NCBI RefSeq assembly: GCF_963676685.1
Contig: NC_092351.1
Location: 27,714,001-27,778,000, forward strand
Length of the DNA: 64,000 bases
Reading direction: 5' to 3'
Source: Mytilus edulis
Taxonomy: Eukaryota
The first letter of the stretch is position 1. Every line of letters begins with the position of its first letter. Of this stretch, positions 50,901 to 57,966 are shown one piece after another. A model generated the notes under the pieces. That model did not search any database. It saw nothing but the letters and a program-made list of their open reading frames with translations, and was not told where the DNA came from. The position numbers and the translations under genes were made by a program.

Positions 50901-53052
50901 TAAGTATAGTAGTATTTGGTTATTTGTCAAGTGGATAGAATGGTACGATATGGTCGTTTCAAAAATTTCATTTACTCTTAAAATTTACATTATCCTGCTT
51001 TATTTGTCAAACAATTTGTTTACATTGTATCGGCAACAATTAGAACATATTAATTGTATAACTTCATATATCTATATTTCAAATGCTTCTGGGACTTAAT
51101 ATTTTTATGAACAATATCCTGGTTTATGAGTAAAACAATTTGTGGTCAATTAAAAGTATGGTTTAACTTTAAAATTGCCAACTTTGTTTTGGTATTTCAC
51201 TTTATTTGAAGTTTGCGTTAACTATGATCGGGATCTGTTCAGTGCGTCCTCGTTTCTTTCTTTGGGTGAGAGGGGATATGATCTGTAGCTGTGTCTTTGT
51301 ATAAATTAATTGTATGATCTACTATTTATTAAGGTTAACTGCTATGTGTCTTTTTTGTAATTTCTCTTGATGCGATAGAATTTTGCATGTACAATTTTGT
51401 ATGTATTATTTGTAATATAGTTGTAAGGTTTCAAAAATGATAGATGCGTAGTTGTTTAAAATTGTCATTTGTCTGATTAAAATAAATTGTAGCGACACTG
51501 TCACGTTCTGGTGCCATTAAAAAGAAAAATACTGACTGAAATTTGTAAAAAATGTGCTTATAAATTTTCTGTCTTATGAAAAGAAAAGATGATCTTAAAA
51601 ATCGTTTGCATGAGACATTGTCACGCAATGGAATATTACTGAATTATAAAATTGTTTCCTAACATTTTATCATTTTTCATAAATTGTTATGTTTTCTTTC
51701 TTTGTGGGAAAACACATTCCCGGCTCTCCCTATGCATATTGCATAACTGTCCAAGAAAATGTGATGCAAAACTATTAAGATAAATTCAAAAATAGAGTTC
51801 CATAAAAACAAACCTGACAAAACCAAACATATCAATCAACAGAATGAGTAAAAATACAACTGTCATATATCTTATTAGTACCGGCATTTACTAAATCAAA
51901 TTGATTGATCGGTTATACAAGTGAGAGGTTTAAGTAGCTATAAACCTAGTTTAATCCACCATTTTCTACTTAAGAAAATGTCTGTACCAAGTCAGTAGTA
52001 TGATAGTTGATATCCATTCGTTTGATGTCTTTCAGCTTTTGATTTTGTCATTCGCTTACGGACTTTCTGCTTAGGTGTTCGGTATTTTTATTAATTTATT
52101 TTTAAAGATGGTTTTATAATTAGGTTAACATTGTATTACAAATCAAAGTATAGATACTAGTCCAATCTTTCATTATGAAGCATATATGATCATTCCGATT
52201 ACTTGTCAATCTCATGTAAATGTTAAATCTAATGAAATTTCAGCCCGATTCGGAATTTCCTTATGGACATTTCCAGACTTCATAGATGATATTCAAAACT
52301 TTGTTTTCTCCTTCTATAGCTGTTCTCAGATTAAACTTTCAAAGGCAAGTTTTACATGATTTCAACTGTGTAATTTGAAAAAAAATTAGCTTCTCTATCT
52401 CTTCTCTATCCCTGGTAGGTAAGCGTTTCCAACACTTCGATGAGCACTGCGATAATGACCTGAAATCAAATCATTACTGGTGAAATTGAGTAAATTGCAA
52501 TCAGTTCATTAAGAAATAACACAATTTTAGACGATAATGATGTGAAGTGATTTTGGTATTAAGGGCAAATTTATTGTCGCTGTTTTTATGTCTAGGTATC
52601 CTATCAATAAAATATGATGAGACACATTTTTTGTATTATATAAGTTTTCAATGGTATGATTTTGTCTATTTTTCGTTGTTAATCAACTCATAATATATAA
52701 ATAAAAAGTTTTTTTCAGATCTTGCTAATTTACCATACACGTTAAAAATAATAAATCATTTTAAACACAATAGGTACCAGATTTAAAAGTATTCTGTGCC
52801 TCATGTGTCTGTATATCTAAACAGATGACAATGATTCTGTTATAGTATGCGTTTTAAATTACAAATGGTAGGCATTCAGAACTGAATATTTTATCAAGCA
52901 TGCTAAGAAAACGTTAAAACTGAACGTTAATGTGTCACACTTTCATCAGACGGAAAATGGACGAAACATATAGTTAATAGTACAAAGTCAGCATTAGAAC
53001 ATGTAAATCTACCGAGGAAACTAAAATTTACGCTTTATATATATATAGTGAA

Positions 53053-56000
53053 GCCCAGGTGGTCGTGTGGTCTAGCGGGACGGCTGCAGTGCAGGCGATT
53101 TGGTGTCACGATATCTCAGTAGCATGGGTTCGAATCCCGACGAGGGAAGAACCAAAAATTTGCGAAAGCAAATTTACAGATCTAACATTGTTGGGTTGAT
53201 GTTTAGACGAGTTGTATATACATTATGTACACAGCCATGTATCACCATCATTGATGGCGATCCGATGGACACATCTGTTGTAGAGTTGTCACTGACTCAG
53301 ACGTACTTATAAATATAATTATTTTCTGTGACTGTATATTACATTAATTTGTAGGATCTTTTACTATAGATAATTTAGCTGATCTGTAACAATAACATCT
53401 TCATGCCTTATATATATATCATGTACTGTAGTACGCCGCTAGATTAAAACTGACGAGGAAAGGTAACACACGGCCAGCGAAAGCTCTTTTAATTGAGAGC
53501 CCAGGTGGTCGTGTAGTCTAGCGGGACGGCTGCAGTGCAGACTATTTGGTGTCACGATATCACAGTAGCATGGGTTCGAATCCTGACGAGGGAAGAACCA
53601 AAAATTTGCGAAAGCAAATTTACAGATCTAACATTGTTGGGTTGATGTTTAGACGAGTTGTATATACATTATGTACACAGCCATGTATCACCATCATTGA
53701 TGGCGATCCGATGGACACATCTGTTGTAGAGTTGTCACTGACTCAGACGTACTTATAAATATAATTATTTTCTGTGACTGTATATTACATTAATTTGTAG
53801 GATCCTTTACTATAGATAATTTAGCTGATCTGTAAAAATAACATCTTCATGCCTTATATATCATGTACTGTAGTACGCCGCTAGATTAAAACTGACGAGG
53901 AAAGGTAACACACGGCCAGCGAAAGCTCTTTTAATTGAGAGCCCAGGTGGTCGTGTAGTCTAGCGGGACGGCTGCAGTGCAGACTATTTGGTGTCACGAT
54001 ATCACAGTAGCATGGGTTCGAATCCTGACGAGGGAAGAACCAAAAATTTGCGAAAGCAAATTTACAGATCTAACATTGTTGGGTTGATGTTTAGACGAGT
54101 TGTATATACATTATGTACACAGCCATGTATCACCATCATTGATGGCGATCCGATGGACACATCTGTTGTAGAGTTGTCACTGACTCAGACGTACTTATAA
54201 ATATAATTATTTTCTGTGACTGTATATTACATTAATTTGTAGGATCTTTTACTATAGATAATTTAGCTGATCTGTAAAAATAACATCTTCATGCCTTATA
54301 TATTATGTACTTTAGTACGCCGCTAGATTAAAACTGACGAGGAAAGGTAACACACGGCCAGCGAAAGCTCTTTTAATTGAGAGCCCAGGTGGTCGTGTGG
54401 TCTAGCGGGACGGCTGCAGTGCAGACTATTTGGTGTCACGATATCACAGTAGCATGGGTTCGAATCCTGACGAGGGAAGAACCAAAAATTTGCGAAAGCA
54501 AATTTACAGATCTAACATTGTTGGGTTGATGTTTAGACGAGTTGTATATACATTATGTACACAGCCATGTATCACCATCATTGATGGCGATCCGATGGAC
54601 ACATCTGTTGTAGAGTTGTCACTGACTCAGACGTACTTATAAATATAATTATTTTCTGTGACTGTATATTACATTAATTTGTAGGATCCTTTACTATAGA
54701 TAATTTAGCTGATCTGTAAAAATAACATCTTCATGCCTTATATATCATGTACTGTAGTACGCCGCTAGATTAAAACTGACGAGGAAAGGTAACACACGGC
54801 CAGCGAAAGCTCTTTTAATTGAGAGCCCAGGTGGTCGTGTAGTCTAGCGGGACGGCTGCAGTGCAGGCGATTTGGTGTCACGATATCACAGTAGCATGGG
54901 TTCGAATCCTGACGAGGGAAGAACCAAAAATTTGCGAAAGCAAATTTACAGATCTAACATTGTTGGGTTGATGTTTAGACGAGTTGTATATACATTATGT
55001 ACACAGCCATGTATCACCATCATTGATGGCGATCCGATGGACACATCTGTTGTAGAGTTGTCACTGACTCAGACGTACTTATAAATATAATTATTTTCTG
55101 TGACTGTATATTACATTAATTTGTAGGATCCTTTACTATAGATAATTTAGCTGATCTGTAAAAATAACATCTTCATGCCTTATATATTATGTACTTTAGT
55201 ACGCCGCTAGATTAAAACTGACGAGGAAAGGTAACACACGGCCAGCGAAAGCTCTTTTAATTGAGAGCCCAGGTGGTCGTGTGGTCTAGCGGGACGGCTG
55301 CAGTGCAGACTATTTGGTGTCACGATATCACAGTAGCATGGGTTCGAATCCTGACGAGGGAAGAACCAAAAATTTGCGAAAGCAAATTTACAGATCTAAC
55401 ATTGTTGGGTTGATGTTTAGACGAGTTGTATATACATTATGTACACAGCCATGTATCACCATCATTGATGGCGATCCGATGGACACATCTGTTGTAGAGT
55501 TGTCACTGACTCAGACGTACTTATAAATATAATTATTTTCTGTGACTGTATATTACATTAATTTGTAGGATCCTTTACTATAGATAATTTAGCTGATCTG
55601 TAACAATAACATCTTCATGCCTTATATATCATGTACTGTAGTACGCCGCTAGATTAAAACTGACGAGGAAAGGTAACACACGGCCAGCGAAAGCTCTTTT
55701 AATTGAGAGCCCAGGTGGTCGTGTGGTCTAGCGGGACGGCTGCAGTGCAGGCGATTTGGTGTCACGATATCACAGTAGCATGGGTTCGAATCTCGACGAG
55801 GGAAGAGCCAAAAATTTGCGAAAGCAAATTTACAGATCTAACATTGTTGGGTTGATGTTTAGACGAGTTGTATATACATTATGTACACAGCCATGTATCA
55901 CCATCATTGATGGCGATCCGATGGACACATCTGTTGTAGAGTTGTCACTGTCTCAGACGTACTTATAAATATAATTATTTTCTGTGACTGTATATTACAT

Positions 56001-56228
56001 TAACTTGTAGGATCCTTTACTATAGATAATTTAGCTGATCTGTAACAATAACATCTTCATGCCTTATATATCATGTACTGTAGTACGCCGCTAGATTAAA
56101 ACTGACGAGGAAAGGTAACACACGGCCAGCGAAAGCTCTTTTAATTGAGAGCCCAGGTGGTCGGGTGGTCTAAAAGCAAAAGCAAATTTACAGATCTAAC
56201 ATTGTTGGGTTGATGTTTAGACGAGTGG
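53053..56228 (+). mobile_element. Head-to-tail array of a 442-bp tRNA-headed, hammerhead-containing unit (retrozyme/SINE-like satellite); 7 full units plus 1 internally deleted partial unit
   Basis: Units start at 53053, 53499, 53941, 54383, 54825, 55267, 55709 and 56151. A box TGGTCGTGTGG (53060-70), B box GGTTCGAATCC (53127-37), hammerhead core at the end of each unit, (TA)n on both flanks. Confidence 0.85.
53438..53500 (+). ncRNA. Candidate type I hammerhead ribozyme (copy 1 of 7 identical copies; predicted cleavage after 53486, 53928, 54370, 54812, 55254, 55696, 56138)
   Basis: Stem I ATTAAAA/TTTTAAT; CTGACGA; stem II closed by G-C; GAAA; palindromic A-G-C-U stem III; CUC cleavage triplet. 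Stem II is weak. Confidence 0.65.
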
Positions 56229-57474
56229 TATATATATATATATATATATGTCACTTCTCTAAGACCACTTCTCGAAAATGGATGCAAAGAATGTAATGCG
56301 ATAGGTGTTTTGAATATGAATCTAATAAACTAGAGAGAAAAAAATACAACTAAAGGCTGCAAGGATAGTAGCAAGGCTTACAAAAGTTTTATTTTAGAAT
56401 CCTTATATTTTGAAATGGGTTGGGGAAACTGCAGCAGAAAGGTGTAGAAAACGAAAATGAACAGTTTAAAAAAAAATACATGATAACTATTACCCCCAAT
56501 TTTTAATCGATTGTCTACCTCCAGTTATATTTTATGTCAGTGGATACAACCTCAGAAATAAGGATATGTATACACCTCTAGATGTAGACTACGAATAACT
56601 AAAACGTCGTTCGTACCATCTACAGTACTGTCAGAATATAGAATAATTTAAATAAAACTATAAACAAAAACCAACAACTATCCCAAAATTCAAACGACAA
56701 ATAAAGGGTGAATCTTTTAGATCGCCAACATCTTATAATTAATGGGAAGGGTTCAGATGAGTGATATGATTAATTTGTTGAATAGTTCAAAATTGTCCTC
56801 CAGTTCTCCTGAAGAAAATGCCATTCATTACCTTCTAGAATGACAATCATTTTATTACAAAAAAAATATCCCTGGTTAATGATTCTGCAAATCGTAGAAT
56901 ATATATTGACATTGAAAGATGATTGTTTTGAAAAGATACAAATAATTACGAAATTTACTCCAAAATGTTCAACAGATATAGGAAAATGTGGTATGAGTGC
57001 CAATGAGACAGGTTGGACAACTCTAAATCCAAATAACAATTTATAAAAGTAAACCATTATAGGTCAAGGTACGGCCTTCAACACGGAGCTTTGGCTCACA
57101 CAGAACAGCAAGCTATAAAGGGGCTAAAAAATTACTAGTGTACAACCATTCAAACGGGAAAACCAACAGTCTAATCTATATAAAAACGAAAAACGAGAAC
57201 CACTTATGATCCACAAAAACAGACGTCAATGTGTTATTAAACAGTTATGCATATTTTAACATTCCAAGTCAATAGTTTTTGTTTTGTTTTGTAATCCAAT
57301 GGCATACCAATATGTGACTGCTTTCTTTATTTTCTATATCCGAAACTATATTAATTATGTATTTACTGTCAATATTTATAGATTATCGTTGAGATGACCA
57401 ATGATAATCTGTTTATCGCGATTTCATCGTGACGACGTTGTTAATTTCATAGACATCAAGCACGTGCGTCCTTA

Positions 57475-57966
57475 TTTTTATGCCCCACCTACGATAGTAG
57501 AGGGGCATTATGTTTTCTGGTCTGTGCGTCCGTTCGTCCGTCTGTCTGTCTGTCCGTTCGTTCGTTCGTCTGTTCGTTCGTCCGTCTGTCCGGCTTCAGG
57601 TTAAAGTTTTTGGTCAAGGTAGTTTTTGATGAAGTTGAAGTCCAATCAACTTGAAACTTAGTACACATGTTCCTTATGATATGATCTTTCTAATTTTTAA
57701 AGCCAAATTAAACTTTTGACCCAATTTTCACGGTCCACTGAACATAGAAAATGAAAGTGCATGTTTCAGCTTAAAGTTTTTGGTCAAGGTAGTTTTTGAT
57801 GAAGTTGAAGTCCAATCAACTTGAAACTTAGTACACATGTTCCCTATGATATTATCTTTCTAATTTTAATGCCTAATTATATTTTTTATCCAATTTCACG
57901 GTCCATTGAACATGGAAAATGATAGTGTGAGTGGGGCATTCGTGTACTTTGGACACATTCTTGTTT
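57475..57966 (+). mobile_element. HINE-type element with a GTCY/GTTC microsatellite and two internal repeats of about 170 bp
   Basis: 5' ATGCCCCAC...GGGGCAT stem-loop, tetranucleotide microsatellite, internal repeats at about 57595 and 57765, 3' GTGGGGCAT, hairpin GTGTAC-TTT-GGACAC, ending TTCTTGTTT. Confidence 0.85.

What the first reader, a model, noticed from the sequence alone, without database searches (positions are those of the whole stretch)
53053..56228. Candidate tRNA-promoter plus hammerhead retrozyme array (circular-RNA replicon), 442-nt monomer
Seen: seven near-identical head-to-tail units. Each starts with a tRNA(Leu/Ser)-like head (A and B boxes, acceptor stem broken) and ends in a full hammerhead consensus: ATTAAAA-CUGACGA-G...C-GAAA-GC-UC^-UUUUAAU. 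The cleavage site lies 12 nt before the next tRNA head. The hammerhead segment is invariant in all 7 copies while other parts vary. Known: tandem hammerhead repeats exist in animals (newt satellite 2, Schistosoma Sm-alpha with a Pol III promoter, non-LTR retrozymes that yield circRNAs), and PLEs are proposed mobilisers. Inference: multimeric transcripts self-cleave into six 442-nt monomers that can circularise and be retrotransposed. I cannot tell whether this family has already been described.
Basis: partly seen in the sequence, partly recalled or inferred. Interest (0 to 1): 0.9.

Follow-up and report, generated by a model that had tools for sequence, protein, structure and literature searches.

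The report
tRNA-headed tandem retroelement, hammerhead doubtful
The seven-copy 442-base repeat is real. It belongs to a very abundant mobile element of this mussel-like genome that carries a tRNA-type promoter and inserts into (TA)n repeats the way Penelope-like retroelements do, but its "hammerhead ribozyme" is most likely a look-alike sitting inside a conserved long RNA stem.

Summary
In detail: there are 7.1 head-to-tail units of 442 nt at 98% identity, each with A- and B-box matches and the CUGACGA...GAAA...UC boxes.

The family is large, with about 4,500 units and about 2,600 arrays in a 1.37 Gb genome of 14 large contigs. Arrays share a fixed 3' end at unit position 183 followed by (TA)n. 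Their 5' starts vary, their upstream flanks end in (TA)n, and inverted partial copies are frequent. [quoted passage not shown] This is a PLE-style retrotransposition signature.

The hammerhead fails the comparative tests:
- Rfam gives no hit.
- Helices II and III are not canonical.
- 56% of units have U at core position 9, and only 31% have CUGANGA.
- The "helix I" 3' strand is a T-run of variable length with no compensating change.
- A sister family with a 475-nt period lacks both boxes.

The same segment instead forms a long stem with the tRNA-like head. That stem is 97% paired and 13 of its pairs show compensatory changes. The hammerhead pairing shows none.

The best reading is a Pol III-type, rod-forming, PLE-dependent, SINE-like element. 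No RNA data could be obtained. Other readers of this scan noted the same family on other pieces of this genome.

The parts
53036..53047 (.). (TA)6 tract directly upstream of the array: the remaining upstream half of the (TA)n target microsatellite
   Evidence: In most of the 16 independent loci examined the upstream flank ends in (TA)n.
53048..53486 (+). Unit 1. It starts at about unit position 8-12 (GTGA-AGCCCAGG), just upstream of the tRNA-like head. This is a possible full-length 5' end, at about the expected Pol III start.
   Evidence: 97.5% identity over unit positions 12-442.
53487..56138 (+). Six full 442-nt units, with frame position 1 at 53487. Inner units share array-private alleles, which indicates in situ amplification after insertion.
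56139..56237 (+). Terminal partial unit: positions 1-34 and 122-183, with an internal deletion of most of the head. It ends at the family's canonical 3' end (unit position 183).
   Evidence: The same 3' end is found at most of the independent loci examined.
56229..56248 (.). (TA)n tail, which is also the downstream half of the target microsatellite
53514..53524 (+). A-box-like element (TAGTCTAGCGG) of unit 2, repeated every 442 nt
   Evidence: Read from the sequence and compared with the TRGCNNAGTGG consensus (established knowledge). No tRNA model hit.
53573..53583 (+). B box (GGTTCGAATCC) of unit 2, repeated every 442 nt. Unit 7 has one change.
   Evidence: 6 matches against 0.04 expected.
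53443..53493 (+). Hammerhead-like box arrangement, first of seven: AUUAAAA 53443-49, CUGACGA 53450-56, GAAA 53479-82, GCUC 53483-86, UUUUAAU 53487-93
   Evidence: The forced hammerhead fold scores -1.1 kcal/mol against an MFE of -9.4 kcal/mol. It has no covariation.
53487..53490 (+). T-run at the unit junction (T4 here, up to T10 at other loci): a candidate Pol III terminator. It lies in the loop of the junction hairpin.
53848..54014 (+). Conserved long stem. The 3' region of one unit (positions 362-442) pairs with a head (positions 11-86). Across a junction this is a hairpin. In a unit-length transcript it is a terminal panhandle.

Best explanation
The array is one insertion, later enlarged in place, of an abundant non-coding retroelement. 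Each 442-nt unit carries a tRNA(Ser/Leu)-derived head with Pol III A and B boxes. Each unit ends in a T-run that may act as a weak Pol III terminator.

The unit RNA folds into a rod in which the head pairs with the last 80 nt. The 'hammerhead' boxes lie in the loops and strands of this conserved stem. They are not needed for spread and are probably inactive.

Copies arise by target-primed reverse transcription into (TA)n microsatellites. Synthesis starts at the UAUAUA tract at unit position 177-183 of sense-strand RNAs longer than one unit. These are most simply read-through transcripts of existing arrays. The cDNA 5' ends are joined at variable points.

Shown: the anatomy, copy numbers, insertion ends, stem covariation and association with the PLE. 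Inferred: Pol III transcription, the read-through template, PLE dependence and ribozyme inactivity.
For: Family size: 4,504 3'-region motifs and 7,129 tail motifs, with reversed-pattern controls of 0. The excess of tails implies about 2,600 array ends.

Insertion signature: in the roughly 16 independent arrays examined, the 3' end is at position 183 plus (TA)n in most. The 5' starts fall at 12, 42, 64, 159, 176, 208, 295, 301, 316 and 368/369. Upstream flanks usually end in (TA)n, and several loci have adjacent inverted partial copies. Published PLE features match: preference for (TA)n, partial tandems and inverted 5'-truncated copies (PMC8557442).

Association with the PLE:
- 7 of 30 loci of 3.2 kb centred on GIY-YIG hits hold this family, and 3 hold sister family B. 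My estimate from the copy number is that about 0.2 would do so by chance.
- Element tails face the PLE tail across (TA)n in L039, L044, L045, L052 and L059. In L053 a family B array abuts a 5'-truncated PLE directly.

Rod structure:
- Unit MFE is -127 kcal/mol, z = -3.2. The head pairs with the 3' region.
- Family B has the same architecture.
- RNAalifold predicts 39 pairs.
- On 56 sequences, 97.2% of cells are paired and 13 pairs changed on both sides. None of 500 shuffles reaches this, and slid controls give 22-45% paired.

Against the ribozyme.

Growth in place: array-private alleles are shared by the inner units.
Against: - No RNA data, so transcription, RNA ends and circularity are untested.
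- The tRNA origin rests on box matches and resemblance. No tRNA model scores.
- The PLE link could reflect only a shared taste for (TA)n. The matching control on LINE loci could not be run, because no more genome sequence could be fetched.
- The PLE and the element share no evident 3' sequence apart from (TA)n.
- The structure-fitted alignment leans towards the rod, and the family B rows count as one lineage.
- Viroids and retrozymes also bury active hammerheads in stable rods, so the rod alone does not exclude catalysis.
- 31% of units do keep both boxes, and a few have a better helix II base (CCACC).
Confidence: 0.6

Rival explanations
1. One reading: a working retrozyme. Multimeric transcripts self-cleave at CUC/U through a minimal type I hammerhead acting as a dimer (palindromic AGCU as helix III). 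The 442-nt monomers are circularised by a tRNA ligase and copied by a PLE reverse transcriptase.
For: - All core boxes and a 7-bp helix I are present in the window's subfamily. About 0.003 such arrangements are expected per 64 kb.
- 1,396 units keep CUGACGA.
- A helix III of 1 bp with a 2-4 nt palindromic loop is typical of metazoan and PLE hammerheads that act as dimers (PMC4209133).
- The tandem, AT-rich, highly self-paired unit and the co-resident PLEs fit the published description of non-LTR retrozymes (PMC7229834).
- A circular template would explain multi-unit cDNAs.
Against: - 56% of units have U9 and still form long arrays.
- Family B lacks the boxes, and its shared CGUG suggests that U9 is ancestral.
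- Helix II is 1 bp, then a 4x2 internal loop, then 3 bp. Positions 15.2/16.2 are G/C, not Y/R.
- Helix I is reduced to about 4 A-U pairs in most loci, with no compensating change.
- No Rfam hit.
- The hammerhead fold scores -1.1 kcal/mol against -9.4 kcal/mol for a competing hairpin that covaries.
- Units within arrays are heterogeneous, unlike rolling-circle copies of one circle.
- No insertion end maps to the cleavage site.
Confidence: 0.12
2. The same SINE-like element, but mobilised by a LINE with a (TA)n tail rather than by a PLE. The closeness to PLE copies then reflects only a shared (TA)n target.
For: - A fixed 3' end, 5' truncation, microhomology at 5' junctions and inverted copies (twin priming) are also LINE hallmarks.
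- The genome holds at least 2,329 candidate APE-endonuclease hits.
- Bivalve tRNA-derived SINEs use several LINE partners and can form tandems (PMC11481361).
Against: - Direct abutment of a family B array to a 5'-truncated PLE without an intervening (TA)n.
- Recurrent tail-to-tail pairs with one PLE family.
- In the fully listed part of contig C1 (0-36 Mb), 2 of 6 GIY-YIG hits lie within 2.5 kb of a unit, against 0 of 8 APE hits within 5 kb. This is a very small sample, and the APE domain lies far from LINE 3' ends.
- A (TA)n preference is documented for PLEs.
Confidence: 0.15
3. Spread at the DNA level. On this view the element is a satellite-like repeat dispersed by extrachromosomal circles or rolling-circle replication, or carried by a Helitron/Helentron-type element. 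Arrays would be seeded at (TA)n by microhomology.
For: - Bivalve genomes are rich in short satellite-like arrays carried by Helentrons and MITEs (titles listed).
- The window's array clearly grew by local duplication.
- Junctions coincide with TA-rich microhomology.
Against: - The ends are strongly asymmetric on the strand that carries the Pol III boxes in sense: one fixed end and one variable end.
- No conserved flanking carrier sequence at 16 loci.
- Chimeric junctions with a retroelement.
- About 2,600 dispersed short arrays.
Confidence: 0.06

Closest known systems
Metazoan non-LTR retrozymes (Cervera and de la Pena 2020, PMC7229834), including the Mytilus galloprovincialis 350-390 nt family
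   Same: Short, AT-rich, non-coding tandem units present in thousands of copies. The unit RNA is predicted to be highly self-paired. The genome also holds PLEs. A hammerhead-like type I box arrangement spans the unit junction.
   Different: The published mussel hammerhead (construct Mg353) has a regular 5-bp helix II and an ACGCGCGU helix III, and has no sequence similarity to this motif. Here the core is mutated in most copies, the helices do not covary, and Rfam is silent. This family has a tRNA-type head, which that paper does not describe for the mussel retrozyme.
Schistosoma Sm-alpha SINE-like element (tRNA-derived Pol III promoter plus hammerhead); recalled from the literature, not re-read here
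   Same: A tRNA-derived head with A and B boxes combined with a hammerhead-type motif in a repeated, non-coding retroelement.
   Different: The Sm-alpha ribozyme is canonical and cleaves efficiently. Here activity is doubtful, and insertion targets (TA)n with PLE-type structures.
Penelope-like elements with (TA)n insertion bias (Neptune, Naiad; Craig et al. 2021, PMC8557442)
   Same: (TA)n targets, partial tandems, inverted 5'-truncated copies, and 'HHR-core-only' motifs that fit no stem descriptor.
   Different: This element encodes nothing and has its own Pol III-type promoter. The PLE found beside it has a C-terminal endonuclease, so it is not a Naiad.
tRNA-derived SINEs of bivalves, including tandem-like SINE structures (PMC11481361)
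   Same: A tRNA-related head, a non-coding body, a 3' tail ending in a simple repeat, and occasional tandem and palindromic arrangements.
   Different: The unit is 442 nt. Multi-unit arrays are the rule. The body pairs back onto the head as a covarying rod. The likely partner is a PLE, not a LINE.

Membership tests
Hammerhead ribozyme (type I) | Conserved core CUGANGA ... GAAA ... UH | tested here: inconclusive
   Present in all 7 window units. Family-wide, only 31% of units have CUGACGA and 56% have CUGACGU. Sister family B has neither box.
Hammerhead ribozyme (type I) | Helices I, II and III formed and kept by compensatory change | tested here: not met
   Helix II is G-C, then a 4x2 loop, then 3 bp. 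Helix III is 1 bp with a 2-nt loop. On 56 sequences no pair changed on both sides, and no measure exceeds the shuffles. The hammerhead fold scores -1.1 kcal/mol against an MFE of -9.4 kcal/mol.
Hammerhead ribozyme (type I) | Match to the curated covariance models (Rfam hammerhead families) | tested here: not met
   No match at E<=1 in the window region or at E<=10 in four related loci.
Hammerhead ribozyme (type I) | Site-specific self-cleavage | not testable with these tools
   Needs in vitro transcription or RNA end mapping.
Non-LTR retrozyme | Short non-coding tandem repeats dispersed in the genome, AT-rich | tested here: met
   (the window is 68% A+T).
Non-LTR retrozyme | Expressed as unit-length linear and circular RNA | not testable with these tools
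No paper was found on this family.
tRNA-derived SINE | Head with internal Pol III promoter (A and B boxes at tRNA-like spacing) | tested here: met
   The B box is exact, with 6 matches against 0.04 expected. The A-box-like 11-mer lies 48 nt upstream. The head is conserved between families A and B. It is not recognised as a tRNA by ARAGORN or Rfam.
tRNA-derived SINE | Retrotransposition signature: fixed 3' end with a simple-repeat tail, 5' truncation, dispersed copies | tested here: met
tRNA-derived SINE | 3' tail shared with a partner autonomous element | tested here: inconclusive
   Only the (TA)n tail is shared with the adjacent PLE family. No other similarity was found in 30 PLE loci. LINE 3' ends could not be fetched.
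PLE-mobilised element | PLE-type insertion structures: (TA)n target, partial tandems, inverted 5'-truncated copies, chimeras with PLE copies | tested here: met
   compared with PMC8557442. Dependence on the PLE enzyme itself is inferred, not shown.

The most novel reading that the evidence does not exclude
The youngest subfamily, which includes this window's array, may have acquired a weakly active dimeric hammerhead from a non-ribozyme stem-loop through a few point changes: U9 to A, and creation of the CUC/UUUU junction. That would be a natural case of a hammerhead being born inside a Pol III-transcribed, PLE-dependent rod RNA, with older subfamilies and the sister family preserving pre-ribozyme states. 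Separately from catalysis, the element may be the first clear Pol III 'SINE' that rides on a Penelope-like element.
Probability: 0.1. Interest if true: 0.8.

Novelty: new variant of a known kind. Interest (0 to 1): 0.4.

Why it matters
Retrozymes are proposed to depend on Penelope-like elements, but direct genomic evidence for that dependence is thin. This family has thousands of copies and PLE-style ends. It sits tail-to-tail with one PLE family, and one junction is chimeric with a PLE copy. It could therefore serve as a model for how PLE reverse transcriptases pick up non-coding RNAs and build tandem copies.

The case is also a caution. A perfect-looking hammerhead box arrangement in a repeat can be a by-product of another conserved RNA structure. 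Box matching without family-wide variation and covariation would overcount ribozymes. If the ribozyme were nevertheless active in the young subfamily, the family would record the stepwise origin of a hammerhead.

Tried and rejected
- Rfam cmscan at permissive thresholds and ARAGORN, on the window and on related loci: no hammerhead and no tRNA.
Full-length PLE copies and LINE loci could therefore not be fetched, and the LINE control for enrichment could be done only crudely, from coordinates on part of contig C1.
I replaced it with shorter patterns.
- The supplement of the PLE paper is not held, so no published consensus was available for comparison.
- Literature searches found no description of this family.
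- I rejected identity with the published Mytilus retrozyme Mg353, because its hammerhead and body are different.
- I rejected rolling-circle copying of a single circle as the source of this array, because its units are heterogeneous and the inner units share array-private alleles.
- A MAFFT alignment of families A and B was out of register by one column in the stems. I replaced it with a covariance-model alignment.
- Not used: complex prediction, protein structure tools and protein homology searches. The element is non-coding, and the window has no ORF of 180 aa or more.
Full report
**1. What is there**

TRF reports an array at 53052-56172 with period 442, 7.1 copies and 98% matches. Read against the unit, with frame position 1 at 53487, the array has three parts:
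- a first unit that starts at about position 8-12;
- six full units (53487-56138);
- a last partial unit (positions 1-34 and 122-183) that ends at 56237.

A (TA)6 tract lies just upstream (53036-53047) and a (TA)10 tract follows (56229-56248). The 64-kb window has no ORF of 180 aa or more and is 68% A+T.

**2.

The B box GGTTCGAATCC occurs 6 times, against 0.04 expected. An A-box-like 11-mer lies about 48 nt upstream of each.

The box arrangement AUUAAAA / CUGACGA / 22 nt / GAAA / GC / UC / UUUUAAU occurs in all seven units. A scan requiring only the boxes and at least 6 contiguous helix I pairs finds 1 hit in 24 Mb of Markov sequence scanned on both strands. That is 0.003 per window, but tens per genome of this size.

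Rfam gives no hammerhead or tRNA match at E<=1, and ARAGORN finds no tRNA.

Read strictly, the motif deviates from a canonical hammerhead:
- Helix II is G10.1-C11.1, then G.G and A.A, then three pairs.
- Helix III is A15.1-U16.1 closed by GC.
- Positions 15.2/16.2 are G/C, where the published descriptor expects GAAAY/RUH (supplement of PMC7229834).

The forced hammerhead fold scores -1.1 kcal/mol. The MFE of -9.4 kcal/mol uses a competing hairpin, GCUCUU/GAGAGC, and helix I pairs have an ensemble probability of about 0.001.

The reported invariance of the segment is not informative. Only 12 of 442 columns vary among the six full units, so a 58-nt segment is free of them by chance with p of about 0.19.

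**3. The family**

The window lies on contig C8 of a 1.37-Gb assembly with 14 large contigs. I read this as mussel-like, but that is only an inference.

A 28-place pattern spanning the core region, with the 8 core places left free, matches 4,504 times, with a reversed-pattern control of 0. The tail motif matches 7,129 times, and 2,545 of those continue into the next unit under a longer and therefore stricter pattern. The excess of tails over 3' regions implies roughly 2,600 array ends, so there were thousands of separate insertions.

**4. How copies are made**

In the roughly 16 independent arrays examined, the 3' end is at unit position 183 in most of them. It reads ...GACGAGTTGTATATA followed by (TA)n of variable length. 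Rarer ends lie at positions 165 and 282, and some arrays end at inverted junctions.

The 5' start varies: 12, 42, 64, 159, 176, 208, 295, 301, 316 and 368/369. The upstream flank usually ends in (TA)n. Several starts coincide with TA-rich places in the unit. Several loci have an inverted partial copy beside the array.

The fixed end is the 3' end of the strand that carries the A and B boxes in sense. This is the signature of target-primed reverse transcription of sense RNA into (TA)n.

Craig et al. describe the same set of features for endonuclease-bearing Penelope-like elements (PLEs): (TA)n preference, partial tandems and inverted 5'-truncated copies (PMC8557442).

**5. Link to a PLE**

The genome has at least 858 candidate GIY-YIG hits. 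Of the 30 loci of 3.2 kb fetched around the best hits, 7 contain this family and 3 contain a related family B. From the copy number I estimate that about 0.2 loci would do so by chance.

The neighbouring PLE has RVT_1 followed by a C-terminal GIY-YIG domain. Its 3' UTR is followed by (TA)n.

Element tails face the PLE tail across the (TA)n tract in L039, L044, L045, L052 and L059. In L053 a family B array abuts a 5'-truncated PLE copy in the same orientation, with no (TA)n between them. That arrangement is what a template switch during reverse transcription would leave.

I could not run the same test on LINE loci, because no more genome sequence could be fetched. PLE dependence therefore remains an inference.

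**6. Family-wide test of the hammerhead**

- Of the 4,504 units, 1,396 (31%) have CUGACGAG, 2,531 (56%) have CUGACGUG (U at core position 9), and 577 have other changes.
- U9 units form long arrays, for example at least 15 units with period 443 on C1.
- The sequence after GAAAGCU differs by subfamily: CUUUU plus a T-run of 4 to 10, UUAUUAUU, or CAUUCUU. AUUAAAA is constant, so helix I is not compensated.
- Some older subfamilies have CCACC rather than CCAGC before GAAA. That would give a better helix II base, but they lack the helix I match.
- Family B has a 475-nt period and is 62-72% identical to the unit in BLAST matches. It keeps the head, the T-run and an AAGGTAACAC block, but has neither CUGANGA nor GAAA. 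Its shared CGUG suggests that U9 is the older state.

**7. What the segment does instead**

The unit RNA folds with MFE -127 kcal/mol, z = -3.2. The fold is a rod in which head positions 11-86 pair with positions 362-442:
- GAGC with GCUC;
- UGGUCGUGU with ACACGGCCA;
- AGUCUAGCGG with CCGCUAGAUU;
- GCUGCAGUGCA with UGUACUGUAGU.

The hammerhead boxes fall in the internal loops and strands of this stem, and the T-run lies at its tip. Across a junction the structure is a hairpin. In a unit-length transcript it is a terminal panhandle followed by U residues.

All ten family A representatives and all three family B copies fold the same way on their own.

RNAalifold on family A predicts 39 pairs. 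Three pairs in the tip stem have compensatory changes, and one of them involves the supposed cleavage-site C.

With a covariance model built from family A, 56 matches including family B were aligned. The two rival structures were then counted on that one alignment:

| Measure | Rod | Hammerhead pairing |
|---|---|---|
| Cells paired | 97.2% | 86.5% |
| Pairs changed on both sides | 13 (47 cells) | 0 |
| Comparison with 500 shuffles | none of 500 reaches the observed values | no measure above the shuffles |
| Slid controls | 22-45% paired | 31-59% paired |

For the rod, six of the eleven pairs of the outer stem are changed on both sides in family B and still pair.

Caveats: the alignment is fitted to the rod, family B counts as one lineage, and viroid-like RNAs can hide active hammerheads in rods.

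**8. This array**

Its inner units share alleles that are rare or absent at 17 other loci (for example at positions 55/57, 98, 350 and 376/384). The edge units look like the family consensus. The seven copies therefore partly reflect local duplication after insertion. They are neither rolling-circle copies of one circle nor seven separate events.

**9. Mechanism proposed**

Pol III starts a few bases upstream of the head. The T4 run is a weak terminator, and subfamilies with UUAUU have no T-run of four at the junction. Read-through therefore gives RNAs longer than one unit that run through the terminal (UA)n of the source array.

A PLE endonuclease nicks a (TA)n tract. The exposed DNA end pairs with the UAUAUA tract at position 177-183. 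Reverse transcription then runs for a variable distance, and the cDNA is joined at TA microhomology.

Only the anatomy and the end statistics are shown. The transcription model, the enzyme and the inactivity of the ribozyme are inferred.

**10. Comparison and novelty**

The published mussel retrozyme (Mg353) has a different, regular hammerhead and a different body. Sm-alpha of Schistosoma is the closest in design, but it has a canonical ribozyme (this is from memory).

I found no paper on this family, and I could not query Dfam or Repbase.

Other first-stage notes of this scan describe the same family on other pieces of this genome. Two read it as a hammerhead retrozyme and one as a rod-like, Penelope-dependent Pol III unit. 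My tests agree with the latter.

**11. Verdict**

The array and the tRNA-type head are real. It is a PLE-style, (TA)n-targeted, SINE-like tandem retroelement. The hammerhead reading is not supported by comparative evidence, but without RNA or bench data it is not excluded for the young subfamily.

Noticed in passing
L053:2084-2897 (minus strand); L044:1978-2400 and L052:1974-2300 (minus strand): Sister family B: a 475-nt tandem unit with a clearer tRNA-Ser/Leu-like head, the same tail design (...CAGACTTATA plus (TA)n) and the same rod fold. It lacks the CUGANGA and GAAA boxes.
   Followed up: partly
L052:1-1961 and L044:679-1977 (same family in L045, L050, L053, L055, L059): [quoted passage not shown] One search reports intact 784-aa open frames for this family. 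It has a 3' UTR of about 195 nt followed by (TA)n. I saw no canonical hammerhead by eye in this 3' UTR.
   Followed up: partly
L044:568-661: A near-perfect 94-nt palindrome centred on a short (TA) tract. It produces spurious high-scoring Rfam microRNA matches on both strands and probably marks an inverted duplication at a (TA)n insertion site.
   Followed up: no
window 57520-57592: A (CGTC)n / 16-nt-period microsatellite about 1.3 kb downstream of the array.
   Followed up: no
G000:C1:54353016-54359765 (coordinates only): An array of at least 15 units with period 443 made of the U9 (CUGACGU) variant. It is much longer than the window's array.
   Followed up: no
L017-L020 (G000:C11:13855444-13862389): An array in which 434-nt units with an 8-nt deletion in the head (GGTG-GTCTAG) are interspersed, often alternately, with 441-nt units. 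This looks like a higher-order repeat.
   Followed up: no
window 1-64000: No open reading frame of 180 aa or more on any strand, and 68% A+T. The array lies in a long non-coding stretch.
   Followed up: no
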